This document shows, one piece after another, positions 43,020-63,883 of a stretch of 64,000 nt of DNA. A program made the position numbers and the translations under genes. Below the pieces are notes generated by a model. That model ran no database searches. It was not told where the DNA came from and saw nothing but the letters and a program-made list of their open reading frames with translations. Each line of letters opens with the position of its first letter. The first letter of the stretch is position 1. The DNA lies in IMG/VR virus record IMGVR_UViG_3300028558_000791, positions 1 to 64,000 of that record; one strand, written 5' to 3'.

Positions 43020-43022
43020 TAT

Positions 43023-43422: not shown

Positions 43423-43428
43423 GAATAT

Positions 43429-43515: not shown

Positions 43516-43624
43516 AATAATACGGGGATTGATTAGACCGAAATGATCCGTATTAGCTGTTATGTTTGGTCAATTCTGCATAACGACAGAAGCTATGTCC
43601 AGTAAAATGGAGTCGTCTTCTGAA

Positions 43625-43880
43625 GATGAATGCCGATAAGGATTACACTAATACAACCGAGCCTCACGCCGTAGAATGCCCGCAAGGATTTCATTCCACA
43701 AATACCGGGTGGCTCACATCTCCCACTACATTACAAGAGATGATGAAAATTAAACTGAGATGTCTGACAAGCCTGCCTACCAGTTAGAGTAACAGGCTCA
43801 GTGGTGTAACTGATAATACACTGTGATTACTTGTTTACTTGTAAACAAAATAATTGCTATCTTTATCAACTTTAGTCATC
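43625..43880 (+). ncRNA. Y RNA-like 4 (large unknown cargo)
   Basis: GATGA-ATG..GATAAGGAT-TACA / ATCTTTATC..TAG-TCATC. Confidence 0.7.
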
Positions 43881-43887
43881 AAAATAT

Positions 43888-43962
43888 TCTGCTCTAGTGT
43901 AATTAGCACGGCGATCTCTTTGTAGGTCGAGGGTCATGGTTTAAGTCCATGGGGCGGAGCCA
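43888..43962 (+). ncRNA. tRNA-like RNA (Gln-like T1-A72, G73) with irregular anticodon arm
   Basis: TCTGCTC/GGGCGGA plus GCCA; CGATCT-CTTTGT-AGGTCG. Confidence 0.65.
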
Positions 43963-43982
43963 AAGCAAATCATGAGAAAGCA

Positions 43983-44411
43983 ATGTTTACTTCAACCGGA
44001 ATCCTTCAATATGATCCTGGTCAGGGTCTAAAACATTTCGATCCATGGTGGGCTCTTCTAGCCTGTGACGATGAAGTATCTAGGTATTATGCCTGGTTAC
44101 TAAAGAGACACGGAGTAGAAGTCTACCCTAACGATAAAGGGTTGTGGGGAACACACGTTTCAGTTTTGAAAGGTGCCGTCCCTCCCAATCAAGATAAGTG
44201 GGGCAAGTATCAAGACTTCGAAGTAGAAATCCATCTCAATCATCTTGTCCGTTATGATAACGGGAAACATGCTTGGGTAGATGTATACTCAGAAGATTTA
44301 TCAGCAATCCGACAGGAGTTAGGCTTCGATGCCAAGCCCTGGTACCATCTGACAATTGGTAGGTTGGTGAGACCATTTGATGTGGACTTTACCAAATATG
44401 GCATAACCTGA
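43983..44411 (+). CDS. 2H phosphoesterase family protein
   Basis: Two HxS/T motifs (THVSV, YHLTI) about 65 aa apart. Confidence 0.7.
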   Translation: MFTSTGILQYDPGQGLKHFDPWWALLACDDEVSRYYAWLLKRHGVEVYPNDKGLWGTHVSVLKGAVPPNQDKWGKYQDFEVEIHLNHLVRYDNGKHAWVDVYSEDLSAIRQELGFDAKPWYHLTIGRLVRPFDVDFTKYGIT

Positions 44412-44427
44412 TATATAATCAGCACAT

Positions 44428-44502
44428 ACCCTCGTACGCATCGGGTGAGGCGGGAAGCTTGTCAAGCTTTTGAGGGCGGTTCGAGTCCGCTCGGGGGTGC
44501 CA
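44428..44502 (+). tRNA. tRNA-Asp(GTC)
   Basis: GAAGC-TTGTCAA-GCTTT; G73-CCA. Confidence 0.85.
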
Positions 44503-44569
44503 AAGTCAAATGCCTTGATAGGATTACATTTTACCAAAAGAAAACATCTTATCTACTTTTTGTTGACTT
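44503..44569 (+). ncRNA. Y RNA-like 5 (minimal, stem only)
   Basis: AAGTCAA-ATG..GATAGGAT-TACA / AAAC-ATCTTATC..TTG-TTGACTT. Confidence 0.8.
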
Positions 44570-44572
44570 TTT

Positions 44573-44666
44573 CGATCACGCGTAGCTGGTTGCTCGGGCG
44601 AGACTTATAATCTTGCAAGGACTGATATTCCGTAACGGCAGGGTTCGATTCCCTGGTGATCGACCA
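44573..44666 (+). tRNA. Atypical tRNA-Ile(TAT), 6-bp anticodon stem, long variable region
   Basis: CGATCAC/GTGATCG plus ACCA; GCGAGA-CTTATAA-TCTTGC. Confidence 0.75.
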
Positions 44667-44669
44667 TAT

Positions 44670-44746
44670 GGCACTGTAGCCCAAAGGCAGGAGGCACCTG
44701 ACTTAAAATCAGTTCAGTGTGGGTTCAAATCCCACCAGTGCTACCA
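44670..44746 (+). tRNA. tRNA-Leu(TAA) with short variable loop
   Basis: CTGA-CTTAAAA-TCAG; no type II arm. Confidence 0.85.
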
Positions 44747-44765
44747 ATAAAGATATAGTTAATAT

Positions 44766-44841
44766 GGAACTTGAGCAAGTATGGTTATTGCATCGGTCTG
44801 AAAAGCCGACAAACGGGGTTCGATCCCCCGAGGTTCCACCA
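44766..44841 (+). tRNA. tRNA-Phe(GAA)
   Basis: TCGGT-CTGAAAA-GCCGA; ACCA. Confidence 0.9.
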
Positions 44842-44842
44842 A

Positions 44843-45193
44843 ATGAGAATTGTTCAAAAGCCTTGGGGCCATGAAGAAATCTGGGCAGAAACTCCCAACT
44901 ATGTTGGAAAAGTTCTCTCAATCAATCCTGGTCACAGACTCTCAAGACAATATCATAATCTCAAAGAAGAAACATTCAGAGTTCTTTTTGGGACGTTGAC
45001 GCTAGAAATAGGTGAGGGTGACGATATAGTTACTCACGTATTAACGGCAGGTCAAACTTTTCACTGTCCTCCAAAGACAGTTCATAGAATGATTTGCCAA
45101 CGAGTTATCAACTATGCACCAGTAAATGTATTGGAAGTATCAACCAATCATTTAGATGATGTAGTAAGATTAGAAGACGATTATAAAAGATAA
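44843..45193 (+). CDS. Cupin domain protein (mannose-6-phosphate isomerase C-terminal-like)
   Basis: KPWG, LSRQYH..KEE, HR, DDVVRLEDDY. Confidence 0.85.
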   Translation: MRIVQKPWGHEEIWAETPNYVGKVLSINPGHRLSRQYHNLKEETFRVLFGTLTLEIGEGDDIVTHVLTAGQTFHCPPKTVHRMICQRVINYAPVNVLEVSTNHLDDVVRLEDDYKR

Positions 45194-45270
45194 CGTGCTA
45201 TAGCTCAGTTGGTTAGAGTGCCTCTCTGATAAGGAGGAAGTCCCAGGTTCGAATCCCGGTAGCACGACCA
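45194..45270 (+). tRNA. tRNA-Ile(GAT)
   Basis: Canonical cloverleaf. Confidence 0.92.
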
Positions 45271-45481
45271 GTAACGAATGCAGTTAGGATTACATCCATA
45301 ACGACCTTAAAGTAGTTGACAGAGCCGCGAGGCGCTGAATCGATGGCAACAAAACGATCACCAGGTAATGCTGAGGTCCATCAGACTCTTGAGTCGAAGT
45401 TGCGGGGCGAACGGGAAGTATCTCGAAAGAGACTTTCAATGTGCCGGTCACACCCAGTATCTTAGCAATTTTTGTCGTTAT
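45271..45481 (+). ncRNA. Y RNA-like 6 (large unknown cargo)
   Basis: GTAACGA-ATG..GTTAGGAT-TACA / ATCTTAGC..TTG-TCGTTAT. Confidence 0.78.
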
Positions 45482-45485
45482 ACAT

Positions 45486-45561
45486 GGGACGGTAGCTCAG
45501 TGGTTAGAGCGCAACGCTGATAACGTTGAAGTCGATGGTTCGATTCCATCTCGTCCTACCA
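45486..45561 (+). tRNA. tRNA-Ile(GAT)
   Basis: Canonical cloverleaf. Confidence 0.95.
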
Positions 45562-45697
45562 ATGGCAAGCCATTAAAGCCCTTCCTTCTATAATTAATTG
45601 ATAAAACAGGACTTTTGCTTTCTTGCCAGATGATATTACATTTATGGCCCCACGCTTTAGTGGGTCACCATAAATAATAAATGAAGGTCGCACCTTC

Positions 45698-45786
45698 AGC
45701 CTGCCCACATGGATGGAAACTGTGGCGTCACCTTGGTAAACCAAGTAGTAAAGTGACAAGCCTGCCCACATGGTTGGAAACTGTGG
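45698..45786 (+). repeat. 28-nt direct repeat x2 with 33-nt hairpin spacer
   Basis: AGCCTGCCCACATGGWTGGAAACTGTGG at 45698 and 45759. Confidence 0.85.
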
Positions 45787-45789
45787 AAA

Positions 45790-45866
45790 GAATCGTTTAG
45801 CTCAATGGTAGAGCGTGGTCACTAGTGACGACTAAGATGCGGGTTCGATTCCCGTAATGATTCCCA
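45790..45866 (+). ncRNA. His-like tRNA (G-1:C73) with 9-nt anticodon loop
   Basis: GAATCGTT/AATGATTC-CCA; TGGTC-ACTAGTGAC-GACTA. Confidence 0.75.
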
Positions 45867-45894
45867 AGGGGACAACATTGTTGCTCCCTCAATC

Positions 45895-46048
45895 GAGGCA
45901 AATGCACCGAAGGTTTACATTTGGAATAATCATATCGTCGTAAGACGGTCGCAGGTTCGAATCCTGCAACTTCCGAAAGGAAGTTTGGCTGAGTGGTCTA
46001 AAGCAATGATGCTGAAAAGCATGCTAACTTTCAAATTTTTGTTGCTTC
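45895..46048 (+). ncRNA. yrlA: Y RNA-like 7, classical YrlA architecture
   Basis: GAGGCAA-ATG / TTG-TTGCTTC; T arm GCAGG-TTCGAAT-CCTGC, acceptor AACTTCC-GAAA-GGAAGTT, then D arm. Confidence 0.85.
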
Positions 46049-46050
46049 AT

Positions 46051-46179
46051 CTCCCGCTAGTTTAAAACGAAACACTTGTTATAGAGGACGTATACTTAAT
46101 CTATGATGAGCAAGTAGTAGAGCAAAACACCTCCACGCTAAGGAGGAGATTGCGAGTGCAAGTCTCGCAAGGGAGACCA
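46051..46179 (+). ncRNA. tRNA-like RNA with ~50-nt hairpin inserted in the D loop
   Basis: CTCCC/GGGAG plus ACCA; CCTCC-ACGCTAA-GGAGG; GCGAG-TGCAAGT-CTCGC. Confidence 0.7.
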
Positions 46180-46184
46180 AGGGT

Positions 46185-46511
46185 ATGAACCAAGACAAGC
46201 CGACAATGAAGGACCTGAAAGAAGGTCCGCCATTACTTTGTCCTATCTGTGATAGACCAAACTACTTCCCTTCAGACCATCACATGGTTCCGAAGTCAAG
46301 AGGCGGCAAGTCTACTGAAACGATCTGTGAAGATTGCCACAAAGCAATCCATGCACACTTCACCAATAAAGAATTGGAAGAAACGTATCATACGCCAGAA
46401 GCTTTGTTAGCTCATGAAGGTTTTGCCAAACAGATTAAATTTCTATCGAAACAAGATCCCGGCGGCAGATCGAAAACTAAAAAGAATAAAGATCGTCTAA
46501 GACGAGAATAA
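46185..46511 (+). CDS. HNH endonuclease
   Basis: CPIC, DHHMVPKSRGG, CEDCHKAIH. Confidence 0.85.
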   Translation: MNQDKPTMKDLKEGPPLLCPICDRPNYFPSDHHMVPKSRGGKSTETICEDCHKAIHAHFTNKELEETYHTPEALLAHEGFAKQIKFLSKQDPGGRSKTKKNKDRLRRE

Positions 46512-46516
46512 ATTGT

Positions 46517-46595
46517 GGTGCTATCGTATTTGTGGCCTTCAAGACTGCCCGCTGAAAACGGGACAAAATGAGTTCGATTCTCATTGGCACCACCA
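46517..46595 (+). tRNA. tRNA-Phe(GAA), weak D arm
   Basis: CCCG-CTGAAAA-CGGG; GGTGCTA/TGGCACC plus ACCA. Confidence 0.8.
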
Positions 46596-46664
46596 GCTAA
46601 TCGCGTGATATATCCTGTGTAACCAAGCGTGAGCCCCCGAGGCCACGATCGAAAAGGCGGTAAT

Positions 46665-47276
46665 ATGGGACAAGTAATTCTAGCGAAATGCGTTGTAACA
46701 ACAGAAGAAGATTGGGTTCCAGTTGTATTAGAGGATGACCTCGAAACCTTAGCTGTACAGCAAGGTATTCTACAAGAGAATCAATCTAAAGCGCGAAGAC
46801 TAAACGATAGAGCAATCAATAAAGATCCCGAAGCTAGTCTTAGGAACACGATCTTTTCTAAGCGCTCTGAGTATGCAGTACATCAGTACTTCGATAAAGT
46901 TCCCCGAGTTACTTTACCCGGAGAGTTTCATGACTGGCCAGATGTTGGTCAGGCGAATGTTAGATTCATCGGTGATGCAGCCGATGGCTTAATGATACAA
47001 GATAGAGACCAGGGCGAACTGCCCATGATACTAACTACAACCAAGGACTTGACATTTCAAGACCGAACGATATGGTTAATCGGTTGGGGTCTCACAGATC
47101 AATTACGACGTAATTTTTATCTAATCAACCAGTTCCGAGAGAATAAGAATTGGGGTAGAATGGGCGGAGACTTTGAGGACCATGAGCAATTCATTTATCC
47201 TCGCTCGATGCTGACTCCGATGAAATGGTTTAGCAAAGAAACCATGAACGTACCATATATCAATAAAAAGAAATAA
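46665..47276 (+). CDS. Hypothetical protein, related to 50396-50908 (possible PD-(D/E)xK-like fold)
   Basis: E-x-A..., DVG..VR..L....D pattern shared. Confidence 0.5.
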   Translation: MGQVILAKCVVTTEEDWVPVVLEDDLETLAVQQGILQENQSKARRLNDRAINKDPEASLRNTIFSKRSEYAVHQYFDKVPRVTLPGEFHDWPDVGQANVRFIGDAADGLMIQDRDQGELPMILTTTKDLTFQDRTIWLIGWGLTDQLRRNFYLINQFRENKNWGRMGGDFEDHEQFIYPRSMLTPMKWFSKETMNVPYINKKK

Positions 47277-47323
47277 TACTTAGTGGTGCAACCTCAGCCA
47301 CTCTAATTAGCGATGAGGTTCAT

Positions 47324-47398
47324 GGGGCTATGATGTTAATGGTAGCATAGTTGACTCTTAATCAATCCGTCTGAGTTCGATCCTCAGTGGCCCTACCA
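47324..47398 (+). tRNA. tRNA-Lys(CTT)
   Basis: GTTGA-CTCTTAA-TCAAT; ACCA. Confidence 0.92.
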
Positions 47399-47399
47399 A

Positions 47400-47654
47400 A
47401 TGAAAAGATGCAGTGTTTGCAAAAGAAGCGACGTAGAATTCGGCAAGAATAAGAATAAAAAAGATGGCCTACAAGTTCAATGTAAGATTTGTCAGGCACA
47501 AACTTCTGCAAAACATTATCTTTGTAATAAAGAAAAACAGTTAGAAAGAATTTACGAACGCCGTAATCAGTTAAGGCAATCAATCTTTGATTATTTCAAA
47601 GAGCATCCTTGTGTTGATTGTGGCGAGACTGATCCAATAGTTTTAGAGTATAAT
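47400..47654 (+). pseudogene. Truncated HNH endonuclease
   Basis: CSVC..CKIC..CVDCGETDPIVLE, then runs into a tRNA where the catalytic DH is expected. Confidence 0.6.
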
Positions 47655-47731
47655 GGGTCCATAGTGTTAGCGGAGAGCACCACGGTCTTTTAAACCGTCT
47701 AGGCTGGGTTCGAATCCCAGTGGACCTACCA
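47655..47731 (+). tRNA. tRNA-Lys(TTT)
   Basis: ACGGT-CTTTTAA-ACCGT; ACCA. Confidence 0.92.
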
Positions 47732-47734
47732 CAT

Positions 47735-47899
47735 ATGAGCAAGCTTATTGAGGGTGAGGACTTCTACTACGATGAAAGTGGTAAGATGGTTCTCACCCAA
47801 GCTTTTTTATTGAGGCGTGGTTACTGCTGTAACTACAGGTGCAAACATTGTCCGTATAAGAAGGTCCCCGATGGAAAAGATAAAGACCACGATAATTAA
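47735..47899 (+). CDS. DUF5522-like Cys-rich small protein (not in ORF track)
   Basis: Hand translation: EGEDFYY...LLRRGYCCNYRCKHCPY. Confidence 0.75.
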   Translation: MSKLIEGEDFYYDESGKMVLTQAFLLRRGYCCNYRCKHCPYKKVPDGKDKDHDN

Positions 47900-48428
47900 C
47901 CTGTACGGCGGGCCTGGTGCTGGTAAATCTACCTCAGCCGCTTATTTGTATTATCTATTGAAGTGTCAACAAGAAAATGTTGAACTTGTTCGTGAGTATG
48001 TCAAGAACTGGGCCTGGGAAGGTCGAGCGTTCAATGTCTACGATGAACTTTACTTCTTAGGTAAACAGGTTCGACATGAGAGTATGTTGTTCGGCAAAGT
48101 GAAATATATCGTGACTGATGCTCCCGTCTATATGACAGCTTATTATGCCGGCATCTATTGCAGTCAAGGTCTTGCGCAAGGCGTTGAGAAAGCTGCTACG
48201 GCGTTCTATCAGCAAGCCAAGGACGATGGCCACAATCACCTCCACGTCTATTTAAAGCGTCACAGGCCCTATCAGGCTGAGGGGCGTTACCAGTCCGAGA
48301 CTGAAGCGTTGTCCGTTGACTCTGGTGTCTTGGAAATGTTATCTAGACTAGATGTTCCAGTTCTTCATGCCTCACCTGAAGAGGAAGACATGAAGCGAGT
48401 GCTGGAGTTGATTCAGAAAGACGCATAA
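47871..48428 (+). CDS. P-loop ATPase/kinase (NadR/AAA_28-like)
   Basis: INLYGGPGAGKST, ELVREYVK..AWE, IVTD, GRYQ. Confidence 0.8.
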   Translation: MEKIKTTIINLYGGPGAGKSTSAAYLYYLLKCQQENVELVREYVKNWAWEGRAFNVYDELYFLGKQVRHESMLFGKVKYIVTDAPVYMTAYYAGIYCSQGLAQGVEKAATAFYQQAKDDGHNHLHVYLKRHRPYQAEGRYQSETEALSVDSGVLEMLSRLDVPVLHASPEEEDMKRVLELIQKDA

Positions 48429-48429
48429 C

Positions 48430-48843
48430 ATGATTGAAACATTCAAAGACCTTGTGGGTGATGACGCAAAGACGCCCGAAGATATCGATGCAAAACTCAA
48501 AGAGAAGCTTGGTATCGGACTAGATGCAATGGCTGGTGCCCTATGTGACTCTCTCAAGAATAAAGCGGAAGAGGTTGCCGAAGATTGTTTTAGTATTGCT
48601 CCCTACGGAGACTATTCTAAAATGATTGAAGACAAAGCAGAGATGGTTAAGTTCCTCCGAGAGGAGGCGTCTAAGCCAGAACATTGGAAGCTAGACTTCT
48701 TGGAAGTCAAGAAGAAGGAAGATAAACTAATCGAGTTCATCTTCGTAAATTCATCCGTTGATGATGGAGACATTCTCAAAGGATTCGTCTTCGTTGGATT
48801 CAGCGGCATTATCCGTCATGCCTTCGCCCAAATTCACACATGA
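48430..48843 (+). CDS. Hypothetical protein
   Basis: Packed ORF. Confidence 0.55.
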   Translation: MIETFKDLVGDDAKTPEDIDAKLKEKLGIGLDAMAGALCDSLKNKAEEVAEDCFSIAPYGDYSKMIEDKAEMVKFLREEASKPEHWKLDFLEVKKKEDKLIEFIFVNSSVDDGDILKGFVFVGFSGIIRHAFAQIHT

Positions 48844-49070
48844 AAATAATTCTATTATGTTTATGCCTCGTTGGTTGTAACGAGGAATCTAGAGAGGGTT
48901 TTAGGAAAGAAGTTTTCCCAACTGTTCATGAAGAGGCCCAGCGCATTACCTATGTGAAGGATACGAGAACAAATCTATGCTTCGTAAGGAATTCAGTACT
49001 TACGGATGTCAATAGTGTTGTTTTCACCAATGTTCCTTGTACGCCAGAGGTAGAGAAATTGATTAGATGA
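48840..49070 (+). CDS. Small lipoprotein
   Basis: LVGC lipobox. Confidence 0.6.
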   Translation: MKIILLCLCLVGCNEESREGFRKEVFPTVHEEAQRITYVKDTRTNLCFVRNSVLTDVNSVVFTNVPCTPEVEKLIR

Positions 49071-49082
49071 ATTGGAGAATGT

Positions 49083-49172
49083 ATGATTTTATTGGGTGTT
49101 TCCGCACTAGTCCTTACAGGATTTGCATTCTCTTTGACCTTTGAGTTTGTTTACAAGCTAGTCATTAAATGA
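49083..49172 (+). CDS. 29-aa hydrophobic peptide
   Basis: GGAGA RBS; single TM. Confidence 0.45.
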   Translation: MILLGVSALVLTGFAFSLTFEFVYKLVIK

Positions 49173-49212
49173 CATCTAAGGGTAAGTTTCAATTTTAACC
49201 TGGAGACATATT

Positions 49213-49314
49213 ATGCTTTCTACTTTGACTTTCGTTATGGTAGCATGCTTGTTTGCAGACTTCTGCTACGAAAAAGGTGGCATGTTGGTTGCACTCGTAA
49301 AGAGCAAGCTCTAA
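49213..49314 (+). CDS. 33-aa hydrophobic peptide
   Basis: GGAGA RBS; hydrophobic N-terminus. Confidence 0.45.
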   Translation: MLSTLTFVMVACLFADFCYEKGGMLVALVKSKL

Positions 49315-49419
49315 TTAACTCAATAGAAAGCGCTCTTGATTGGGCACTTTCTATCTAAACTAAAAAAAATATCAGGGTTGACACCTGGCAATAAAGCGTT
49401 ATATTATGTGACAGGTTAT

Positions 49420-49495
49420 GGGGCATTAGCTCATCTGGGAGAGCGTCTGCTTTGCACGCAGAAGGCGATCGGTTCAAGTCCGATATGCTCCACCA
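49420..49495 (+). tRNA. tRNA-Ala(TGC)
   Basis: Canonical, G3-U70; TTGACA promoter at 49378. Confidence 0.95.
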
Positions 49496-49639
49496 TAACT
49501 GACTGGTCAAGTACGAAACAGAATTCAATTCGCGAATGTTTCAATAGTTACTTGAACCAGCCTCAGTAAAATTTTGAGTCTCACCCAAGAGATTCTACAA
49601 GTCCTGGACATGACTTGGATTCGGAAACTGTCCGGTAAT

Positions 49640-49713
49640 GGGAACATGGTGTAATATAAACACGAGGCCGTAACTGGCTTAGTTCCAGGTGAAACTCCTG
49701 GTGTCATCCACCA
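49640..49713 (+). ncRNA. tRNA-like RNA with 6-nt anticodon loop
   Basis: AGGCC-GTAACT-GGCTT; CCAGG-TGAAACT-CCTGG; ACCA end. Confidence 0.65.
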
Positions 49714-49844
49714 TCGAGCTGGCATATCCAGCAGAACTGAAGTCTGCGGAAGCTTCAGCGAAGATTAACAAAAAGCGCAACCAAACACTATACATCAGCG
49801 TAGTGTAATCCTAAAAGAGTAATATGCAATTAGGAAGCTGATAT

Positions 49845-49920
49845 GGGGCCTTAGCTCAATTGGGAGAGCGTCACGCTGGCAGTGTGAAGGTCGCGGGTTC
49901 GACCCCCGCAGGCTCCACCA
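49845..49920 (+). tRNA. tRNA-Ala(GGC)
   Basis: Canonical, G3-U70. Confidence 0.95.
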
Positions 49921-50072
49921 TCAAGTTTGTTTGAACATCTCCGTCTAACGGAGTGAACGTTGTCAGCGGCTGGTATGATAGCTCCAGCAACAAATTTGAT
50001 TGGTAGTTGCATTGTAACAGATGCTCTGGGTCCTTGGGAAAATGACCCGGTGAAAATAAACTGTCCCTAGTT

Positions 50073-50149
50073 GGGTCTTTTGATGTAAAGGCTGGCCTCT
50101 AGACTTTAGTGCTAGAGGACATCGGGTTCGACTCCCGAATGATCCGCCA
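50073..50149 (+). ncRNA. tRNA-like RNA, no D stem, loop CT-TTA-GT
   Basis: GGGTC/GATCC plus GCCA; CCTCTAG/CTAGAGG; TCGGG-TTCGACT-CCCGA. Confidence 0.65.
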
Positions 50150-50271
50150 ATGCTTTAGTGGCACTACGTTTGTGGATTTTGTAATGGAATCCCGCAGAAA
50201 CTTGGTGTATTACGTTACCAAGTAGCAAACCATCGCAAGGTGTAAGGCTAGGTCATTACGGCGTGTTTTAT

Positions 50272-50374
50272 GCTTCGCAATTCGAAATAATCTCTGCTGG
50301 CTGTCTTCCGCGGCTGCAAACAAAGAATACTGGCACGGACAGAGAACATGGTGAAATTCCATGGCGAAGCACCA
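50272..50374 (+). ncRNA. tRNA-like RNA with tmRNA-TLD-like layout
   Basis: GCTTCGC/GCGAAGC plus ACCA; CTCTG/CAGAG enclosing about 43 nt; CATGG-TGAAATT-CCATG. Confidence 0.7.
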
Positions 50375-50395
50375 TTAGTTGTTATAGGTAGCTCA

Positions 50396-50908
50396 ATGAA
50401 TCACGATCCGATTACAGTTAAGCTAACCGCCATTGAAAAAAGAGTTGCCATTCTAGTTGGAGATACTAGAACATCAGTATCTAAAGATGATGATGATCGT
50501 CCTGATGCTCATGGTTTAGAGGCTACCAGAGAAGAGGGTCAGAAGATCGATAGACAGGGAGCTACTGCGGAATCAGCTTTCGCCAAGCATCTCAATGTAT
50601 ATTGGTGTGGCTCTGTCAATACTTTCAAGAGCGAGAAGGATGTAGGATCTGTTTTTGAAGTAAGATCCATCGATTCTTTCAAAAAGTCCTTGATTGTTAG
50701 GGCTGATGATGCAGATGATGCGTATTTCGTTTGTGTTGCAGTTCTTGATGATGCCTGTTATATTATGGGCTACCTTCTTGGTAAAGACGCTAAGAAGGGC
50801 AAGTGGTTACGAGATGTCAATGGCCGAGAGCCATCCTTCTTTGTCCCCGTAGATTTTTTGAGAGATCCGCGAGAACTGAAAGATTTGTACTTAAAGATAA
50901 AGAAATAA
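50396..50908 (+). CDS. Hypothetical phage protein (possible PD-(D/E)xK-like fold)
   Basis: GATAESAFAK, DVG..FEVRS; start moved past the RNA gene. Confidence 0.55.
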   Translation: MNHDPITVKLTAIEKRVAILVGDTRTSVSKDDDDRPDAHGLEATREEGQKIDRQGATAESAFAKHLNVYWCGSVNTFKSEKDVGSVFEVRSIDSFKKSLIVRADDADDAYFVCVAVLDDACYIMGYLLGKDAKKGKWLRDVNGREPSFFVPVDFLRDPRELKDLYLKIKK

Positions 50909-51051
50909 TCAAATAAACTACGCAAATGCTTGTATAGGGTTACAAACCCTATCCTCTATGGAGAACGGAGGGCTCATCATGAGCGGTAAAAGTAGAAAAG
51001 GTAACAGAGAATCCTAAGAAAGATACGCTGTCACAGCGTCTATCAGACCAT

Positions 51052-51405
51052 ATGGCCAAGGTATTTAGAACCTGGGCCTTCGTAGCCACTCAAATAGCTT
51101 TTGTAGCCTCTTGGTTTGGCGCACACCACTTCTTCCCACTGCAAGTATCTTTTGATGTCTTGCAGATTTTGCTTCTTACAGAAGGGTGTTGTATCGGTTC
51201 GGTTTTTCTAATGCATCAACACAATGAGCATTCTCTAGATCGTCGCATTGCTCTCAACGATTACATCGTTGATTGTCAGATTCGAAAAGATGTAAAAGAG
51301 TTACTCAAGGACGCAGAAAAGAAAAACAATTTCTGGTGTAATGGATGCGGGGAACCACGATATAAATGTTGCTGCAATGAGCGCTCCCAAGCTCATCAAA
51401 GCTAA
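51052..51405 (+). CDS. DUF1003-like membrane protein
   Basis: Two TMs; (RLSD)HMA..TWAFV..LMHQ..DR pattern. Confidence 0.5.
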   Translation: MAKVFRTWAFVATQIAFVASWFGAHHFFPLQVSFDVLQILLLTEGCCIGSVFLMHQHNEHSLDRRIALNDYIVDCQIRKDVKELLKDAEKKNNFWCNGCGEPRYKCCCNERSQAHQS

Positions 51406-51442
51406 GGGTTTCTATGTATATTGATATATACTTGTTACCTAT

Positions 51443-51516
51443 TCAGGAATCGTCTAATGGTAGGACGCGGGCCTTTGACTCCCGATATGCTGGTTCGAAT
51501 CCAGACTCCTGAGCCA
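51443..51516 (+). tRNA. tRNA-Gln(TTG)
   Basis: Loop CTTTGAC; T1-A72, G73. Confidence 0.9.
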
Positions 51517-51523
51517 GAACCAT

Positions 51524-51597
51524 TCAGGGTTCGTCTAATGGTAGGACAGCAGACTCTGACTCTGCTTATCGAGGTTCGAATCCTTGCCCCTGAGCCA
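51524..51597 (+). tRNA. tRNA-Gln(CTG)
   Basis: GCAGA-CTCTGAC-TCTGC. Confidence 0.93.
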
Positions 51598-51603
51598 GTT
51601 TAT

Positions 51604-51677
51604 TCGGGATTCGTCCAATGGCAGGACAACGGTCTCTGAAGCCGCTAATAGGAGTTCGAATCTCTTATCCCGAACCA
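51604..51677 (+). tRNA. tRNA-Gln(CTG)
   Basis: CGGT-CTCTGAA-GCCG; ACCA. Confidence 0.88.
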
Positions 51678-51698
51678 GTAACAATAGTTACATAATAT

Positions 51699-51776
51699 AG
51701 CAGTATAGAGCAGTCCGGTAGCTCGTCAGGTTCATACCCTGAAGGTCACGTGGTTCAAATCCCGTTACTGCAACCA
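51699..51776 (+). tRNA. tRNA-Met(CAT), initiator-like
   Basis: 1:72 mismatch, GAGC/GCTC D stem, loop TTCATAC. Confidence 0.85.
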
Positions 51777-55761: not shown

Positions 55762-55843
55762 CCTATTTTTACAAATGATCACGCCTTGACACGGGATAAT
55801 TCCGTGAATATCTTGGGGCGTGTAACCAAGGAAAACAATTACG

Positions 55844-56566
55844 ATGCAAGCTACTACCGTTGCCGCTCAAGGCACTGCTGAGACGAAGTTCAATCAAGTG
55901 ACGTTTAGCGTTCATTTGACTGAAGAAGCGCAGACCGTTCCTAATGCCAAGAACAAATTGGGATTGGCAATACTTGGGCTCAATGAAGCTCTTGATGAAG
56001 TGAAGAAGGAATTAGGATTGGAGTTTGTAAAGAACTCAGTCCGTACATCATCCAGTACCCAAGAGAACTGGGAGTACGTTGGTAAGAACAATACTCGCGA
56101 ACTCAAAGGATATACGATGAGTTATTCTCTGGCGTTCAGTATTAGTGATTTGGATAAGGTTTCTAAGGTCTATGATGCTTTAACTTCTATTCCAAAGGTC
56201 AGGGTGTTACCGCCAGCATTTAGTCTCAAGAATCATGACCGTCTCAACAAGCGTGCTCTCAAAGCTGCTCAGAAGAAAGTCGAAGAACGTTTCGCTATGG
56301 AGTGTGAGATTTTGGGTCTTGTCCCAGCAGATTTCGAAATTGCCAGTTGGGAAACTAGTTACAGCGATTCTCAACGCTCTGATCGAGTTGCTAAGATGTC
56401 AATGCGTTCTGTCGCTCCTATGGCAGGAGCACAGAATTATTCGTCTACTGACATCAATATTATTGAATCAGCAGCAGCACCACATGAACCTGCAATTGGA
56501 TTCACCGTTGGCTTAGCCAGCGTTACCGTCAATCTTGAAATAGGATATGTTCGTAAGGCGCGTTGA
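55844..56566 (+). CDS. SIMPL (DUF541) domain protein
   Basis: V.A.G.A, P.F.L, AL..A pattern; TTGACA-N17-TATCTT promoter at 55786. Confidence 0.7.
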   Translation: MQATTVAAQGTAETKFNQVTFSVHLTEEAQTVPNAKNKLGLAILGLNEALDEVKKELGLEFVKNSVRTSSSTQENWEYVGKNNTRELKGYTMSYSLAFSISDLDKVSKVYDALTSIPKVRVLPPAFSLKNHDRLNKRALKAAQKKVEERFAMECEILGLVPADFEIASWETSYSDSQRSDRVAKMSMRSVAPMAGAQNYSSTDINIIESAAAPHEPAIGFTVGLASVTVNLEIGYVRKAR

Positions 56567-56898
56567 ACATGAGCTTAGCTTGGTCAAAGGATATGGAATT
56601 GGATCCTGGTACGTTTGGAGGTTCTCCGGCATGCCATGTTTTAGTAGATATGATGAATCACAATGTTATTCCTATTATAGAGAAGCATCGTGTTTTATCA
56701 TTCATCAATGATGCTATCTATCAATTCAAGTGGTTATCCACTGTGAAGGAGTATGGCGTCAAGGAGAGGTCTATGGTTCTGATGAGGGACGATATTCTAT
56801 CTAGGGTGGATCATATGCCATATCCTGCCAAGTTTAATTCACATCTGAAGAACGTGATAACTCACCACTTCAGACGATACTTGAAAGAAGAGACCTAG
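56563..56898 (+). CDS. Hypothetical protein
   Basis: Packed ORF. Confidence 0.5.
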   Translation: MNMSLAWSKDMELDPGTFGGSPACHVLVDMMNHNVIPIIEKHRVLSFINDAIYQFKWLSTVKEYGVKERSMVLMRDDILSRVDHMPYPAKFNSHLKNVITHHFRRYLKEET

Positions 56899-57250
56899 AC
56901 AATCGCTCCCGTAAGGAGAGGAAAGTCGGAGCTACGTAGGGCAATTTGCTGGCTAACGGCCAGGCGCAGTGATGCGACAGATAGTGCAACAGAAAAGAAA
57001 CCGCCATGAATCCGCCAGGCCCGAAAGGGAGCAACGGTAGATGGTAAGGGTGAAATGGTGGGGTAAGAGCCCACCGCACCTATAGTGATATAGGTGGCAA
57101 GGTAAACCTCAGATGTAGCAAGCTAAATAGAGAGTGACTTGTCCGGTCAATACTCTCGGGTTAGTGCTGGAGCCATTAGGTAACTAACGGCCAAGATTAA
57201 TGATTGTCTCGATTTATAGACAGGACTCCGCTTATAGGGTGTCTTCTTTC
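56883..57250 (+). ncRNA. rnpB: RNase P RNA, bacterial type A
   Basis: GAGGAAAGTCGGAG, AGTGCAACAGAAA, GGGTGAAA..GGTAAGAG, GGTAAACC, ACAGGACTCCGCTTA; P1 GAAAGAAGA/TCTTCTTTC. Confidence 0.93.
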
Positions 57251-57276: not shown

Positions 57277-57966
57277 ATGACAAACAAAGTTACTACCGTG
57301 TCGGCTCGTGGATGTGTCGTGACAGATTACGATACTGCCACTTTTACCCTTTCCTTCAACGAATTCGCCCCTAAAGCGAAGGAAGCAAAGTTGAAGTTAA
57401 AGAAGGGTGCGTCTAAAATTACTGCCGCCCTTGATGAACTCAAGAAGAGGGGCTTGGAGTTTTTGACCAACAACTACCGCTCTAACATTTCGGTTGCTCC
57501 GAATTATGTTTATGACCGTACCAATGGTGTAAACCGAATGGAAGGCCAAAAGGCTACCTATTCCGTTACTTTCCAGACTCCCACATTGGAGATGGTCAAT
57601 GAAGCATATGATGTGCTTTCTGAGTTGGAAGTAAATGAATACACGGTTAACTCCCCAACCTACTCTGTTAGGGCTGAGGCGCAATTCAAACAACAGGCAT
57701 TGGAAGATGCTTGGAAGGTAGCGCAAGTATTGTTTGCTCACCAGTGCAAAACGCTTGGGTTTGAAGCAGACAAGTTCTCTGTGGATAGCTGGCAGGTAAA
57801 CTACAGCGGTCGTGACCATGGTGGTTTCTCTAAGGGAGCTAACTATACTAACGGTCTCGCTGGTGGTAGCGCAGGCGGTAGTGAAGATGACGCCATCGAG
57901 TTGAATGCTGGTCGTGCAGCTATCGATGTCATCCTTACTGTAGATTACGTTCGTACCGGATCATGA
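57277..57966 (+). CDS. SIMPL (DUF541) domain protein
   Basis: Paralog of 55844-56566; ALEDA, PNYVY. Confidence 0.7.
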   Translation: MTNKVTTVSARGCVVTDYDTATFTLSFNEFAPKAKEAKLKLKKGASKITAALDELKKRGLEFLTNNYRSNISVAPNYVYDRTNGVNRMEGQKATYSVTFQTPTLEMVNEAYDVLSELEVNEYTVNSPTYSVRAEAQFKQQALEDAWKVAQVLFAHQCKTLGFEADKFSVDSWQVNYSGRDHGGFSKGANYTNGLAGGSAGGSEDDAIELNAGRAAIDVILTVDYVRTGS

Positions 57967-58607
57967 AAATCAAACTTGCCTACCCCAAGATTCCCGATAC
58001 ACTAGACTGTCCACTCAAGCAGTGTATTGCATTTGAGAAGTATGATGGAACCAATATCCATTGGACTTTCATGCCGGGTGAGGGGTGGCAAGACTACGGT
58101 GCTCGACGTGACAGATATGCCATCAATACAACTGGTGTTAGAGCCTTTGAGGAAGCGCATCCAGAGTTGAAGGGTGTCCATACTCTATGGGATCAAAAGG
58201 ATCTTCTAAATGATTTCCTTAATGAGAATCCTAAATACAATACTGCTAAAGAAATTATTGTATTCACTGAGTATCTTGGACCCCATTCTTTTGCAGGTCA
58301 ACATGACCCGAAAGATGTTATCAAGCAATTAATTATATTTGATGTCCAAGTTGATGGGAGCTTAATTCCTCCTGAACAATTTGTAGAAGACTTCAAACAA
58401 TTCAATATTGCGAGAGTTGTCTTCCAAGGAAAGTTTTCTGGCCAACTCTTCGTAGATGTTCGAAAAGGCAAGTACGATGTCAAAGAAGGGGTAGTAGTTA
58501 AGGGCATTTACAACAATCAAATCTATATGGCTAAGATTAAGACTGAAGCCTATATGGAACGATTGAAGAACGAATTCAAAGATAATTGGAAAGAATATTG
58601 GGAATGA
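57963..58607 (+). CDS. RNA ligase (Rnl2-like adenylation domain)
   Basis: Motif I EKYDGTN, FTEYLG, IFDV, EGVVVK, AKIK. Confidence 0.8.
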   Translation: MKIKLAYPKIPDTLDCPLKQCIAFEKYDGTNIHWTFMPGEGWQDYGARRDRYAINTTGVRAFEEAHPELKGVHTLWDQKDLLNDFLNENPKYNTAKEIIVFTEYLGPHSFAGQHDPKDVIKQLIIFDVQVDGSLIPPEQFVEDFKQFNIARVVFQGKFSGQLFVDVRKGKYDVKEGVVVKGIYNNQIYMAKIKTEAYMERLKNEFKDNWKEYWE

Positions 58608-62259: not shown

Positions 62260-62335
62260 GTCGTCGTACCCAAATGGTTAAGGGACGGAGCTGCAACCTC
62301 CGTATGTGTCCGTTCGAATCGGACCGACGACTCCA
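62260..62335 (+). tRNA. tRNA-Cys(GCA)
   Basis: CGGAG-CTGCAAC-CTCCG; U73. Confidence 0.93.
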
Positions 62336-62344
62336 TACCACTAA

Positions 62345-62434
62345 GGAGATTTGCGTGAGTGGTTGAAACGGTCACCCTGGAAAGGTGAAGGGGTCGCAAG
62401 GCTCCCATGGGTTCGAATCCCATAGTCTCCTCCA
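62345..62434 (+). tRNA. tRNA-Ser(GGA)
   Basis: Type II cloverleaf. Confidence 0.93.
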
Positions 62435-62440
62435 AAACAA

Positions 62441-62638
62441 ATGTGCTATCTATGTTTACAAGACAATCCATTTAATATCCAGGATTTATCTAAAGAAAAG
62501 ATAGATATTAAGAGGAATAGAGCTAAGTTAGTTAAAGAGCTATTAGAGTTTTATTATAAAGAAGTTGTTTGTGATGATGGTAAGTTGGAGATAATAAAAC
62601 TAAAAGAAGAGCAGTATAAATTATCCCGAGAGATGTAA
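62441..62638 (+). CDS. Small hypothetical protein
   Basis: ORF filling the gap between tRNAs. Confidence 0.45.
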   Translation: MCYLCLQDNPFNIQDLSKEKIDIKRNRAKLVKELLEFYYKEVVCDDGKLEIIKLKEEQYKLSREM

Positions 62639-62643
62639 TATAT

Positions 62644-62733
62644 GGAAACTTGGCCGAGTGGTTTAAGGCGCTAGTCTTGAAAACTAGAGATCTCGAAAGG
62701 GGTCCGGGGGTTCGAATCCCTCAGTTTCCGCCA
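62644..62733 (+). tRNA. tRNA-Ser(TGA)
   Basis: Type II cloverleaf. Confidence 0.95.
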
Positions 62734-62755
62734 GATTCATTATTGAAAGATTAGA

Positions 62756-63676
62756 ATGAATAAGATTGCAACATTAGTAGGATGTGCCATTGGAGATGCT
62801 CTTGGCAATCCATTTGAGATGTGGAGTGTCCATGAGCCCAAGCTTAAAGAGTGGGATGGTCAGTTCAAAGCTGGCGGTACTTTCTGGGTAGGAGAGGCCG
62901 GACAATATACCGATGATACCCTAATGAGCCTTGCTTTGTCATATTCTTTGCTTGAGAAGAGCGGATTCGATCAAGAGCACGTAGGTCTTCAGTACTTGGC
63001 TTGGATGGAGTCTGGTAACACTCGCGGTATTGGCGGGACTACTCACAGAGCTTTGACACGAATGAAGAACGGAGCATCCGCTCTTGAGAGTGGTGTTACC
63101 CATAACGATGGCAAGCCTGCCTCTGGTAATGGAACTGCTATGAGAGCCACACCAATTGGCCTCTGGTACCGTAAAGATATCGGCAAGTTGATTGAGGTTG
63201 CAATGGCGGACGCATCCATCACTCATAATTCATTTGAACCCAAGATGGGTTCTGTGGCGGTTGCACTAGGTACTGCATTGATTGCTAATGGTGCAACTGA
63301 CATGATTGAGGTCTTAGAAGAGGTAGCTGAGGTAATCTCTGAATCTATTGTCAAAGAGAAGTTAGTATTGGCCTTAACCCATCTAAAACTGGGTACCGAA
63401 CATTTTGAGGCCCTTGCGCAGATCGGCGTCAATGGCTATGTTCCAGAGACGGTTGGCGCGGCATTCTATTGTTTAGGGGCCAACGCAAACTATAGAGATA
63501 CTGTAGTGTTAGCTGTCAAGGCTGGCGGAGATACTGATACCACTGCGGCGATTGCTGGTGGCATGGCTGGTACTTTATACGGACTTGATGGTATTCCATT
63601 AGAATATAAGGATAAAGTAGAGAATTTCGAGTTATTGCAATCATTGACTGATGAACTTGTCAATAATGAGATATAA
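62756..63676 (+). CDS. ADP-ribosylglycohydrolase (DraG/ARH family)
   Basis: GDALG, YTDDT, GNGTAMR, GGDTDT. Confidence 0.93.
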   Translation: MNKIATLVGCAIGDALGNPFEMWSVHEPKLKEWDGQFKAGGTFWVGEAGQYTDDTLMSLALSYSLLEKSGFDQEHVGLQYLAWMESGNTRGIGGTTHRALTRMKNGASALESGVTHNDGKPASGNGTAMRATPIGLWYRKDIGKLIEVAMADASITHNSFEPKMGSVAVALGTALIANGATDMIEVLEEVAEVISESIVKEKLVLALTHLKLGTEHFEALAQIGVNGYVPETVGAAFYCLGANANYRDTVVLAVKAGGDTDTTAAIAGGMAGTLYGLDGIPLEYKDKVENFELLQSLTDELVNNEI

Positions 63677-63691
63677 TAGTTAGCATAACAC

Positions 63692-63781
63692 GGAGAGTTG
63701 TCCGAGTGGTCTATGGTGAGAGTTTGCTAAACTCTTGGGGTCGAAAGGCCCCCACAGGTTCGAATCCTGTACTCTCCGCCA
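63692..63781 (+). tRNA. tRNA-Ser(GCT)
   Basis: Type II cloverleaf. Confidence 0.93.
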
Positions 63782-63792
63782 CACTGTGTTAA

Positions 63793-63883
63793 GGAATAGT
63801 GCGTGAGTCCGGCTGAAACGGTCTGTCTCGAAAACAGAAGCTCCTTATGGGAGCCAGGGGTTCAAATCCCTTCTATTCCTCCA
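63793..63883 (+). tRNA. tRNA-Ser(CGA)
   Basis: Type II cloverleaf. Confidence 0.93.

What the first reader, a model, noticed from the sequence alone, without database searches (positions are those of the whole stretch)
56883..57250. Phage-context RNase P RNA with compensatory changes in P4
Seen: the conserved regions of type A rnpB are present. P4 reads GAAAGTCGGAG/CTCCGCTTA instead of the usual GAAAGTCCGGG/CCCGGCTTA, a covarying pattern that implies selection on function. It lies among phage-like genes, between two SIMPL paralogs and one gene from an RNA ligase; no rnpA is in the window. Inference: a dedicated processing ribozyme for the atypical tRNA/Y RNA cluster.
Basis: partly seen in the sequence, partly recalled or inferred. 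Interest (0 to 1): 0.72.

Follow-up and report, generated by a model that had tools for sequence, protein, structure and literature searches.

The report
Phage-encoded RNase P RNA gene
A 480-kb soil phage carries its own complete, evolutionarily maintained copy of the RNase P ribozyme (the RNA enzyme that trims tRNA precursors) next to its roughly 57 tRNA genes; many other giant-phage contigs have one too, and I found no published description of this.

Summary
Window 56887-57250 (+) is a full-length bacterial type A RNase P RNA (Rfam RF00010, 272.5 bits against a cut-off of 100). Two P4 base pairs are swapped with compensation on both strands.

The record is a 480.8-kb myovirus-type huge phage. 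It has a large terminase, portal, tail sheath and DNA polymerase, 57 tRNA genes and a tmRNA. It has no 16S rRNA gene and no rnpA.

The gene is not an assembly artefact. Five related huge-phage genomes (terminase 72-88% identical) carry it in the same gene order. rnpB identity falls in step with terminase identity. 52 of 92 helix pairs show compensatory changes.

At least 25 further large viral contigs also carry a full-length rnpB, usually inside tRNA arrays.

The P4 variant itself is ordinary. More than 120 cellular genomes, mostly Clostridia, have it, and none of them is close to the phage RNA.

Nothing indicates specialisation for atypical substrates. The CCA-binding GGU motif is invariant, and 56 of 57 phage tRNA genes encode CCA.

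Best reading: a working ribozyme that uses the host RnpA protein to mature phage tRNA and tmRNA precursors.

New lead: an uncharacterised 109-aa protein gene (orf111) sits directly 5' of rnpB in 12 of 13 loci examined.

Eight of ten literature searches found no report of a phage-encoded RNase P RNA.

The parts
56887..57250 (+). rnpB: full-length bacterial type A RNase P RNA (364 nt)
   Evidence: RF00010, 272.5 bits, E 7.6e-88, model 1-367/367. Syntenic orthologues in five related huge-phage genomes at 247-308 bits.
56923..56931 (+). P4 5' strand AAG(U)CGGAG, with the bulged U at 56926
   Evidence: Sequence. All eight P4 pairs are standard in the window copy. Pairs 71-356 and 73-354 differ from the consensus on both sides.
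57226..57233 (+). P4 3' strand CUCCGCUU
   Evidence: Sequence and pair table.
57157..57162 (+). L15 CGGGUU holding the GGU motif, which pairs with the tRNA 3'-CCA in type A enzymes (established knowledge)
   Evidence: Aligned to the consensus CGGGU. GGU is invariant in 28 distinct viral rnpB copies.
56563..56898 (+). orf111: conserved uncharacterised small protein (109 aa from the ATG at 56569). Its stop codon lies inside rnpB helix P1.
   Evidence: No Pfam or PHROG match. 118 homologous clusters, all from metagenomes, on contigs up to 511 kb. rnpB lies directly 3' in 12 of 13 loci examined. The AF2 model is a four-helix bundle, pLDDT 85, with no informative structural match.
55844..56566 (+). 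SIMPL/DUF541 protein, upstream paralogue
   Evidence: PF04402, E 3.9e-17. Conserved upstream of orf111/rnpB in relatives.
57277..57966 (+). SIMPL/DUF541 protein, downstream paralogue
   Evidence: PF04402, E 5e-17. 80% identical copies at the same place in G002 and G005.
57963..58607 (+). RNA ligase-family protein (214 aa)
   Evidence: PF09414, E 4.5e-9. Found downstream of rnpB in G002, G005, G007 and G012. No sequence match in the PDB.
55786..55814 (+). Promoter-like site (TTGACA, 17-nt spacer, TATCTT) just after a terminator-like hairpin at 55734-55759. Possible start of a SIMPL-orf111-rnpB-SIMPL-ligase transcription unit.
   Evidence: Consensus scan only, and the number of sites is no higher than in shuffled sequence. 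Inference.
41562..51775 (+). Upstream tRNA array, about 24 genes: the presumed substrates
   Evidence: ARAGORN and Rfam. 3'-CCA is encoded.
62260..63883 (+). Downstream tRNA array (Cys and four Ser)
35734..37419 (+). Ro60-like protein (TROVE plus Ro60 vWA domains)
   Evidence: PF05731 and PF25045. It belongs to the wider RNA-handling gene set. No link to rnpB is shown.

Best explanation
This is a functional RNase P ribozyme gene of a huge rhizosphere phage, inherited vertically within its clade. The phage transcribes about 57 tRNA genes and a tmRNA, mostly from dense same-strand arrays. Every one of these needs a 5' leader removed by RNase P.

The phage supplies extra catalytic RNA. It has no rnpA, so the RNA presumably assembles with the host's RnpA protein; type A RNAs accept heterologous RnpA proteins (established knowledge). 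The holoenzyme would recognise phage precursors in the canonical way: the specificity domain reads the T-arm, and the L15 GGU motif pairs with the genomically encoded 3'-CCA. This would keep RNase P capacity from limiting phage tRNA supply during infection.

Shown: identity, completeness and conservation of the RNA; its phage location; purifying selection on its helices; absence of rnpA; CCA-encoding substrates.

Inferred: catalytic activity, use of host RnpA, and the benefit to the phage.
For: - Family identity: RF00010, 272.5 bits, full length.
- Phage identity: TerL, portal, sheath and DNA polymerase by PHROGs lie on the same contig. Coding density is 0.92 and nearly all genes are on one strand. 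There is no 16S rRNA. CheckV estimates 100% completeness.
- Not chimeric: orthologous rnpB sits in the same HNH-OmpA-SIMPL-orf111-rnpB-SIMPL-ligase order in independent contigs G002, G005, G007, G008 and G012. A second rhizosphere sample holds 69% of the locus words.
- Vertical descent: rnpB identity to the window is 86-87%, 72.5%, 66% and 66% where TerL identity is 88%, 79%, 75% and 72%.
- Phylogeny: the window copy sits in an 18-member clade made only of large viral contigs (SH-aLRT 97).
- Selection on structure: 96.6% of cells are paired, and 52 of 92 pairs have two-sided changes. Slid controls give at most 43% and 17; 500 shuffles give at most 83% and 36.
- P4 and L15: P4 is fully paired in 25 of 28 viral copies with an invariant C70-G357 and a bulged U in 27; the L15 GGU is invariant.
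- Substrates: 57 tRNAs and a tmRNA; 56 of 57 encode CCA.
- No rnpA.
- Other tRNA-handling genes: two CCA-adding-type nucleotidyltransferases, two RNA ligases and Ro60.
- Weak expression hint: a soil metatranscriptome holds contigs 91-95% identical to orf111 (depth 70) and to the rnpB 5' half (depth 340-3025), and nothing downstream of rnpB.
Against: - No activity data exist.
- The expression evidence comes from a relative, from assembled contigs, and could include DNA. Most depth over the core comes from other organisms' RNase P.
- The gene is dispensable in the clade. G014 (452 kb, terminal repeats, about 40 tRNAs) and G013 lack it. tRNA number does not separate carriers (41-58) from non-carriers (29-42).
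- The host and its RnpA are unknown, so compatibility is assumed.
- Host RNase P RNA is normally stable and not obviously limiting (general knowledge).
Confidence: 0.7

Rival explanations
1. The phage RNase P RNA works with a phage-encoded partner rather than, or in addition to, host RnpA. The small basic protein orf111, encoded immediately 5' of rnpB, would be a new kind of RNase P protein cofactor, chaperone or regulator. Together they would form a self-contained viral RNase P.
For: - rnpB lies directly 3' of orf111, with the stop codon inside or a few nt from P1, in 12 of 13 loci. These include homologues only 40-49% identical.
- G014 and G013 lack both genes.
- Most homologues are basic, pI 9.5-10.
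- The family is confined to metagenomic contigs, the longest 240-511 kb, and has no Pfam or PHROG match.
- There is no rnpA in the genome.
Against: - Adjacency may only reflect co-transcription, with rnpB processed from the 3' end of the orf111 mRNA.
- G012 and the other viral rnpB lineages (G001/G003 and the copies inside tRNA arrays) have rnpB without orf111.
- L326 has orf111 without rnpB.
- The window's own orf111 has pI 7.9.
- The predicted four-helix bundle does not resemble RnpA or the archaeal/eukaryal RNase P proteins and has only generic matches.
Confidence: 0.15
2. The ribozyme is specialised for unusual phage substrates (atypical tRNAs, suppressor tRNAs, tRNA-like Y RNAs) that host RNase P handles poorly.
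For: - The window holds odd tRNA calls: a 2-nt anticodon call at 42728-42801, a 94-nt tRNA-Ile(UAU), and anticodons AAA, UUA and CUA.
- A Ro60 homologue is present.
- A tRNA-like Y RNA can be an RNase P substrate in M. smegmatis (PMC4201824).
Against: - All canonical recognition elements are conserved and nothing substrate-specific is altered.
- The P4 variant is common in ordinary bacteria.
- Most phage tRNAs score as normal tRNAs at 44-71 bits and encode CCA.
- No Y RNA was detected.
Confidence: 0.08
3. It is a decoy. The RNA's role is to soak up host RnpA (or another RNase P-binding factor) and so disturb host tRNA maturation, not to catalyse cleavage.
For: There is no rnpA. Phages often subvert host RNA metabolism (general knowledge).
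Against: - Conservation extends over the whole catalytic core and the specificity domain, including parts not needed for protein binding: the P4 bulged U, the L15 GGU and the J11/12-J13/14 blocks.
- The phage itself needs RNase P for 57 tRNAs and its tmRNA.
Confidence: 0.05
4. It is not a phage gene: host flank of a provirus, a chimeric assembly, or a decaying passenger copy.
For: - IMG/VR labels the record 'provirus'.
- GC jumps from 0.42 to 0.60 at about 420 kb.
- Many small IMG/VR contigs do carry rnpB at their very ends, as host flank would.
Against: - rnpB lies 57 kb inside the record, on the same strand and at the same GC as its neighbours. The neighbours are conserved around it in five independent related contigs that also carry TerL.
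- Covariation shows selection.
- There is no 16S rRNA.
- The high-GC block holds PHROG families, and one of its proteins has a 53% homologue in a relative bounded by terminal repeats.
- No close cellular copy was found: best 74% over 162 nt in 401 Pseudomonadota, and about 66% over 329 nt among 80 cellular genomes that share the P4 variant.
Confidence: 0.02

Closest known systems
Bacterial type A RNase P RNA (E. coli M1 RNA, Rfam RF00010)
   Same: Full-length match to the family model. It has the P4 pseudoknot with a bulged U, the conserved J3/4, J11/12, J13/14 and J18/2 blocks, P13/P14, P18, and the L15 GGU motif.
   Different: It is encoded by a virus. No cognate rnpA lies in the same genome. 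It sits in an operon-like block after a small unknown protein gene instead of standing alone. Two P4 pairs are swapped, a variant also seen in Clostridia, and P12 is longer than in sister phages.
Translation-related genes of huge phages: tRNA arrays, tmRNA, SmpB, aminoacyl-tRNA synthetases, ribosomal proteins (Al-Shayeb et al. 2020, PMC7162821)
   Same: The same kind of genome (over 200 kb, many tRNAs, a tmRNA) and the same logic of a phage supplementing the host translation apparatus.
   Different: That paper does not mention RNase P, ribonuclease P or rnpB. Two later huge-phage surveys do not either. The tRNA 5'-maturation enzyme itself has not been listed among phage translation genes in anything I could find.
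Phage T4 tRNA cluster matured by host RNase P, with phage RNA ligase and Pnkp repairing tRNA (established knowledge, from memory)
   Same: Clustered phage tRNA genes that need RNase P, and RNA ligase genes in the same genome.
   Different: T4 relies wholly on the host ribozyme. This phage brings its own RNA subunit.
Organellar rnpB genes, such as plastid or cyanelle and fungal mitochondrial RNase P RNA with a protein subunit encoded elsewhere (from memory)
   Same: A dependent genome keeps the RNA subunit while the protein must come from the 'host' genome.
   Different: Organellar RNAs are usually reduced and inherited from the endosymbiont. The phage RNA is a complete type A molecule in a mobile lytic-type genome.
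GOLLD and other large ncRNAs next to tRNA arrays in phages and prophages (discussed in PMC6582537)
   Same: A large structured RNA embedded in, or next to, phage tRNA arrays together with HNH endonuclease genes.
   Different: GOLLD has no known function. This RNA belongs to a ribozyme family with a known activity.

Membership tests
Bacterial RNase P RNA class A (RF00010) | Covariance-model score above the curated gathering threshold over the whole model | tested here: met
   272.5 bits against 100; model positions 1-367 of 367; E 7.6e-88.
Bacterial RNase P RNA class A (RF00010) | P4 long-range helix with a bulged U and an A-rich 5' strand (the catalytic metal-binding core) | tested here: met
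   All 8 pairs are standard in the window copy, with the bulged U at 56926. The helix is maintained by compensated changes across 28 viral copies.
Bacterial RNase P RNA class A (RF00010) | Type A peripheral elements (P13/P14, P18, P15-L15-P16/17) rather than type B elements | tested here: met
   These elements are aligned by the model with high posterior probability. P12-P14, P15-17 and P18 are recovered independently by RNAalifold with covariation.
Bacterial RNase P RNA class A (RF00010) | L15 GGU motif for pairing with the tRNA 3'-CCA | tested here: met
   CGGGUU at 57157-57162. GGU is invariant in 28 viral copies. 56 of 57 phage tRNA genes encode CCA.
Bacterial RNase P RNA class A (RF00010) | Endonucleolytic removal of pre-tRNA 5' leaders | not testable with these tools
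   Needs an in vitro cleavage assay or genetic complementation.
Bacterial RNase P holoenzyme (RNA plus RnpA) | A cognate RnpA protein (PF00825) encoded in the same genome | tested here: not met
   No PF00825 match at E <= 1 in the 480,838-bp record; the control genomes respond. The protein must come from the host or be replaced.
Phage (Caudoviricetes) gene, as opposed to cellular DNA | Physical linkage to virion and packaging genes, absence of cellular core markers, and conservation in related phages | tested here: met
   TerL, portal and sheath lie on the same contig. There is no 16S rRNA. The locus is syntenic in five relatives that share TerL.
   A Ro60 protein is present at 35734-37419. 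No Y RNA family matched at E <= 0.1 in 34-64 kb. Divergent Y RNAs could be missed.

The most novel reading that the evidence does not exclude
A clade of huge soil phages encodes a self-contained viral RNase P. It would consist of a canonical type A catalytic RNA and a new, phage-specific small protein partner (the orf111 family, a four-helix bundle unrelated to RnpA) that replaces or modulates the host protein subunit. This would be the first virus-encoded RNase P and a new class of RNase P protein cofactor.
Probability: 0.15. Interest if true: 0.85.

Novelty: new member of a known kind. Interest (0 to 1): 0.62.

Why it matters
RNase P is one of the few universal ribozymes and has been treated as a cellular and organellar enzyme. 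A conserved, selected copy in huge phages adds tRNA 5' maturation to the translation steps that phages can bring with them, alongside tRNAs, tmRNA, synthetases and ribosomal proteins.

The viral copies form a set of natural, diverged but functional-looking type A variants. They show compensated P4 swaps, P12 insertions and loss of P18, which is useful for structure-function work.

The finding raises two testable questions. How does a viral RNA subunit recruit a protein subunit? Is the tightly linked orf111 protein part of the enzyme?

It also matters for virus-calling pipelines. Such 'cellular' RNA genes may contribute to huge phages being labelled as proviruses.

Tried and rejected
- **blastn against 50,697 GenBank phage records.** Only two hits. 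One is a Salmonella chromosome record. The other is 'Microcystis phage MaAM05', whose matching region is surrounded by fabI, engB, mtgA and glyS and looks cellular. I found no cultured-phage precedent.
- **orf111 as a divergent RnpA.** No Pfam hit even at E <= 10. The AF2 model is all-helical. Foldseek against the PDB gave a best E of 1.1, and VIA-align gave only generic helical bundles at Z <= 8. The ESM Atlas gave nothing. It is not an RnpA homologue.
- **P4 variant as a phage signature or donor marker.** Rejected. More than 120 cellular genomes have it, and they are distant from the phage RNA.
- **Donor or host search.** A sample of 401 Pseudomonadota gave at best 74% identity over 162 nt. 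Other phyla could not be sampled evenly, so the donor and host remain unknown.
- **Does rnpB presence track tRNA number?** No clear relation. Carriers have 41-58 tRNAs and non-carriers 29-42.
- **Metatranscriptome evidence.** Most signal is the universal core from other organisms. Only a few contigs from a relative are informative, so I treat this as a hint.
- **Y RNA.** No Rfam match.
- **High-GC block at 420-478 kb as host flank or chimera.** Rejected on PHROG content and a homologue in relative G014.
- **Not done.** I did not send the 407-column structure string to the count of structure pairs, to avoid pasting long text; the equivalent counts and controls were computed in a script. No complex-prediction job was run, because RNA partners get no verdict and the RNA exceeds 300 nt.

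Full report
**1. The observation**

Rfam's covariance models find one RNase P RNA in the window. It is RNaseP_bact_a (RF00010) at 56887-57250 on the + strand: 272.5 bits against a gathering score of 100, E 7.6e-88, covering model positions 1-367 without truncation.

The 5' strand is AAG(U)CGGAG at 56923-56931 and the 3' strand is CUCCGCUU at 57226-57233. Relative to the family consensus, pair 71-356 is inverted (C-G to G-C) and pair 73-354 is G-C to A-U. The numbering is E. coli numbering from memory. All eight pairs and the bulged U are intact.

The flanking genes are as described:
- SIMPL/DUF541 proteins at 55844-56566 and 57277-57966.
- An RNA-ligase-family protein (PF09414) at 57963-58607.
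- An OmpA-like protein and an HNH endonuclease further upstream.

There is no RnpA (PF00825) in the window or in the rest of the record.

ARAGORN finds 29 tRNA genes in the window, in arrays at about 41.5-51.8 kb and 62.3-63.9 kb.

**2. What the contig is**

The window is the first 64 kb of a 480,838-bp IMG/VR record with a CheckV completeness estimate of 100%.

Evidence that it is a phage:
- PHROG profiles identify a large terminase (233412-235295), portal (235376-237253), tail sheath (291761-294589) and DNA polymerase (207986-211534).
- Coding density under the standard code is 0.92 and nearly all genes share one strand.
- There is no 16S rRNA.
- The genome holds 57 tRNA genes and a tmRNA, and two CCA-adding-type nucleotidyltransferase genes.
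- It holds a second, Rnl1-like RNA ligase and a Ro60 homologue.

The DNA comes from a rhizosphere metagenome, and a second rhizosphere sample holds 69% of the locus words.

The record carries the label 'provirus', and GC jumps from 0.42 to 0.60 at about 420 kb. That block holds phage-type families. One of its proteins has a 53% identical homologue in a relative bounded by terminal repeats. I therefore see no host flank and no chimera.

**3. Is rnpB really a phage gene under selection?**

TerL-based searching of IMG/VR gave 80 related loci. Together with the strict-pattern scan, the larger related contigs fall out as follows:
- Carrying a full-length rnpB at 247-308 bits: G002, G005, G007, G008 and G012.
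- Lacking it: G014 (452 kb, terminal repeats, complete) and G013.

The gene order HNH-OmpA-hyp-SIMPL-orf111-rnpB-SIMPL-RNA ligase is conserved, with small variations.

rnpB identity to the window falls in step with TerL identity:

| Relative | TerL identity | rnpB identity |
|---|---|---|
| G002, G005 | 88% | 86-87% |
| G007 | 79% | 72.5% |
| G008 | 75% | 66% |
| G012 | 72% | 66% |

This is what vertical inheritance predicts.

On a nine-sequence alignment, RNAalifold recovers the type A helices, including P4. 52 of 92 pairs carry two-sided compensatory changes. 96.6% of cells are paired. Partner-slid controls reach at most 43%, and column shuffles at most 83%. One caveat: the structure was derived from the same alignment.

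**4. P4 in context**

Within the viral set, P4 exists in several compensated versions:
- The window's version also occurs in G002, G005, L153, L307, L046, L308 and L325.
- The canonical version occurs in G007, G001/G003, L288 and L320.
- A version with G68-C358 changed to U-A and a U-G wobble at 71-356 occurs in G008, L150 and L151.
- Further versions occur in G012/L323, L296, L309, L313 and L316.

Across 28 distinct copies, C70-G357 is invariant. G72-C355 and the bulged U hold in 27. Pairs 67-359, 68-358, 71-356, 73-354 and 74-353 vary almost only by compensated changes. 25 copies are fully paired.

So the covariation is real evidence of function. The particular variant, however, is not special. 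These are mostly Peptostreptococcaceae and Syntrophomonadaceae. On a tree they lie far from the phage RNAs.

**5. How widespread it is**

Two pattern scans of IMG/VR and Rfam checks give at least 30 viral contigs with a full-length rnpB.

Many are 60-500 kb, and the gene is embedded in dense tRNA arrays. In several, tRNA genes abut both ends of rnpB (L288, L313, L320) or a tmRNA lies nearby (L300, L318). A second huge-phage lineage (G001, 372 kb; G003, 497 kb) has a TerL-like gene and its own rnpB.

On the tree, the window's copy belongs to an 18-member clade made only of large viral contigs (SH-aLRT 97). Other viral copies form at least one further clade and some long single branches. The cellular sampling in that tree is biased towards genomes sharing the P4 variant.

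An even sample of 401 Pseudomonadota gave no close relative: best 74% over 162 nt. The donor and the host remain unknown. The OmpA, outer-membrane beta-barrel and SIMPL genes suggest a Gram-negative host; this is inference.

**6. Mechanism**

The catalytic core and the substrate-recognition elements are all retained.
- The consensus blocks of J3/4-P4, J11/12, J13/14 and J18/2 align.
- The L15 GGU motif is invariant in all 28 viral copies.
- 56 of 57 phage tRNA genes encode the 3'-CCA that this motif binds.

I therefore read it as a generalist, canonical RNase P RNA. It would mature the phage's own tRNA and tmRNA precursors using the host RnpA, because none is encoded. Heterologous RnpA-RNA pairs are known to work (established knowledge).

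The neighbouring RNA ligase, the CCA-adding-type enzymes, Ro60 and tmRNA place it in a broader tRNA/RNA maintenance gene set.

Nothing supports specialisation for atypical tRNAs or Y RNAs. No Y RNA family was detected, although a Ro60 is present and tRNA-like Y RNAs can be RNase P substrates (PMC4201824).

Expression evidence is only a hint. One soil metatranscriptome contains contigs 91-95% identical to orf111 (depth 70) and to the 5' half of rnpB (depth 340-3025), with nothing downstream. The very high depth over 57016-57103 is the universal core from other organisms.

**7. A new lead: orf111**

The 109-aa ORF at 56569-56898 ends inside helix P1.
- It has no Pfam or PHROG match.
- It has 118 homologous clusters in metagenomes, on contigs up to 511 kb.
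- Most members are basic, pI 9.5-10, although the window's copy has pI 7.9.
- Its predicted fold is a four-helix bundle at pLDDT 85 with no informative structural match.

rnpB follows it directly in 12 of 13 loci examined, including homologues only 40-49% identical. The two relatives that lack rnpB also lack orf111.

There are counter-examples. G012 and the rnpB copies inside tRNA arrays have no orf111, and L326 has orf111 without rnpB.

Co-transcription is the simplest explanation. A dedicated protein partner is the most novel reading that is not excluded; I give it about 0.15.

**8. Novelty**

Eight of ten literature searches, combining RNase P, rnpB or the Rfam name with phage, huge phage, jumbo phage and tRNA cluster terms, found no description of a phage-encoded RNase P RNA. 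The main huge-phage papers do not mention it. No GenBank phage record shows a credible copy.

The library is incomplete, so prior mention elsewhere cannot be excluded.

The molecule itself is an ordinary member of a well-known family. What is new is its viral location, its recurrence in huge phages and its linkage to orf111.

**Verdict**
- The P4 point is ordinary.
- The phage-borne ribozyme is real and of moderate to high interest.

Noticed in passing
window 56563-56898; L053, L141-L143, L150-L155, L323-L326: An uncharacterised small-protein family (orf111: four-helix bundle, mostly basic, no Pfam or PHROG match) sits immediately 5' of rnpB in 12 of 13 loci. It has 118 clusters in metagenomes, on contigs up to 511 kb.
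   Followed up: yes
L288 727-1224; L313 1980-2486; L320 462-1021; L300 and L318: In other large viral contigs rnpB lies inside dense tRNA arrays. tRNA genes abut one or both ends with 0-15 nt spacers, and in two contigs a tmRNA lies a few kb away. The ends of the ribozyme could then be made by tRNA processing itself.
   Followed up: partly
window 50073-50149; genome 172924-172997 and 173183-173255: Suppressor-type tRNAs are present (anticodon UUA, and two with CUA). The standard code nonetheless gives 0.92 coding density and ORFs up to 2384 aa, so no genome-wide stop-codon reassignment is apparent.
   Followed up: partly
window 35734-37419: A Ro60-like protein (TROVE plus Ro60 vWA domains) is encoded by the phage. 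No Rfam Y RNA was found within 34-64 kb at E <= 0.1.
   Followed up: partly
genome 420000-478000 (loci L020-L022, L147): GC rises abruptly from about 0.42 to 0.55-0.60. The block has many small ORFs, lower coding density, PHROG families and an Rnl1-like RNA ligase (467104-468198). A 715-aa protein there has a 53% homologue in the terminal-repeat-bounded relative G014. It is therefore phage DNA of different composition, and the 'provirus' label is probably an artefact.
   Followed up: partly
L153 2798-3298; L046 1002-1492; L308 554-1036: Helix P12 of the viral rnpB is an insertion hot spot. One copy (501 nt) has an AT-rich insert holding a 53-codon ORF for a hydrophobic peptide. Two others (about 485 nt) carry a different GC-rich structured insert. 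The window's own P12 is 31 nt longer than in G002 and G005.
   Followed up: partly
genome 258639-259010 (-) and 229261-229659 (+); tmRNA at 170047-170403: Two PolyA_pol/CCA-adding-type nucleotidyltransferase genes and a tmRNA (tag ANDNAFAMAA) add to the phage's tRNA and translation toolkit.
   Followed up: no
L002 (MW495066.1 111385-119472): The GenBank record 'Microcystis phage MaAM05' has an unannotated rnpB-like match flanked by fabI, engB, mtgA and glyS. That part of the record looks cellular rather than viral.
   Followed up: partly
window 53739-54890, 55844-56566, 57277-57966: The phage encodes envelope-type proteins around rnpB: an OmpA-like protein with an outer-membrane beta-barrel, and two SIMPL/DUF541 proteins. 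This hints at a Gram-negative host. Their link to rnpB, if any, is unexplained.
   Followed up: no
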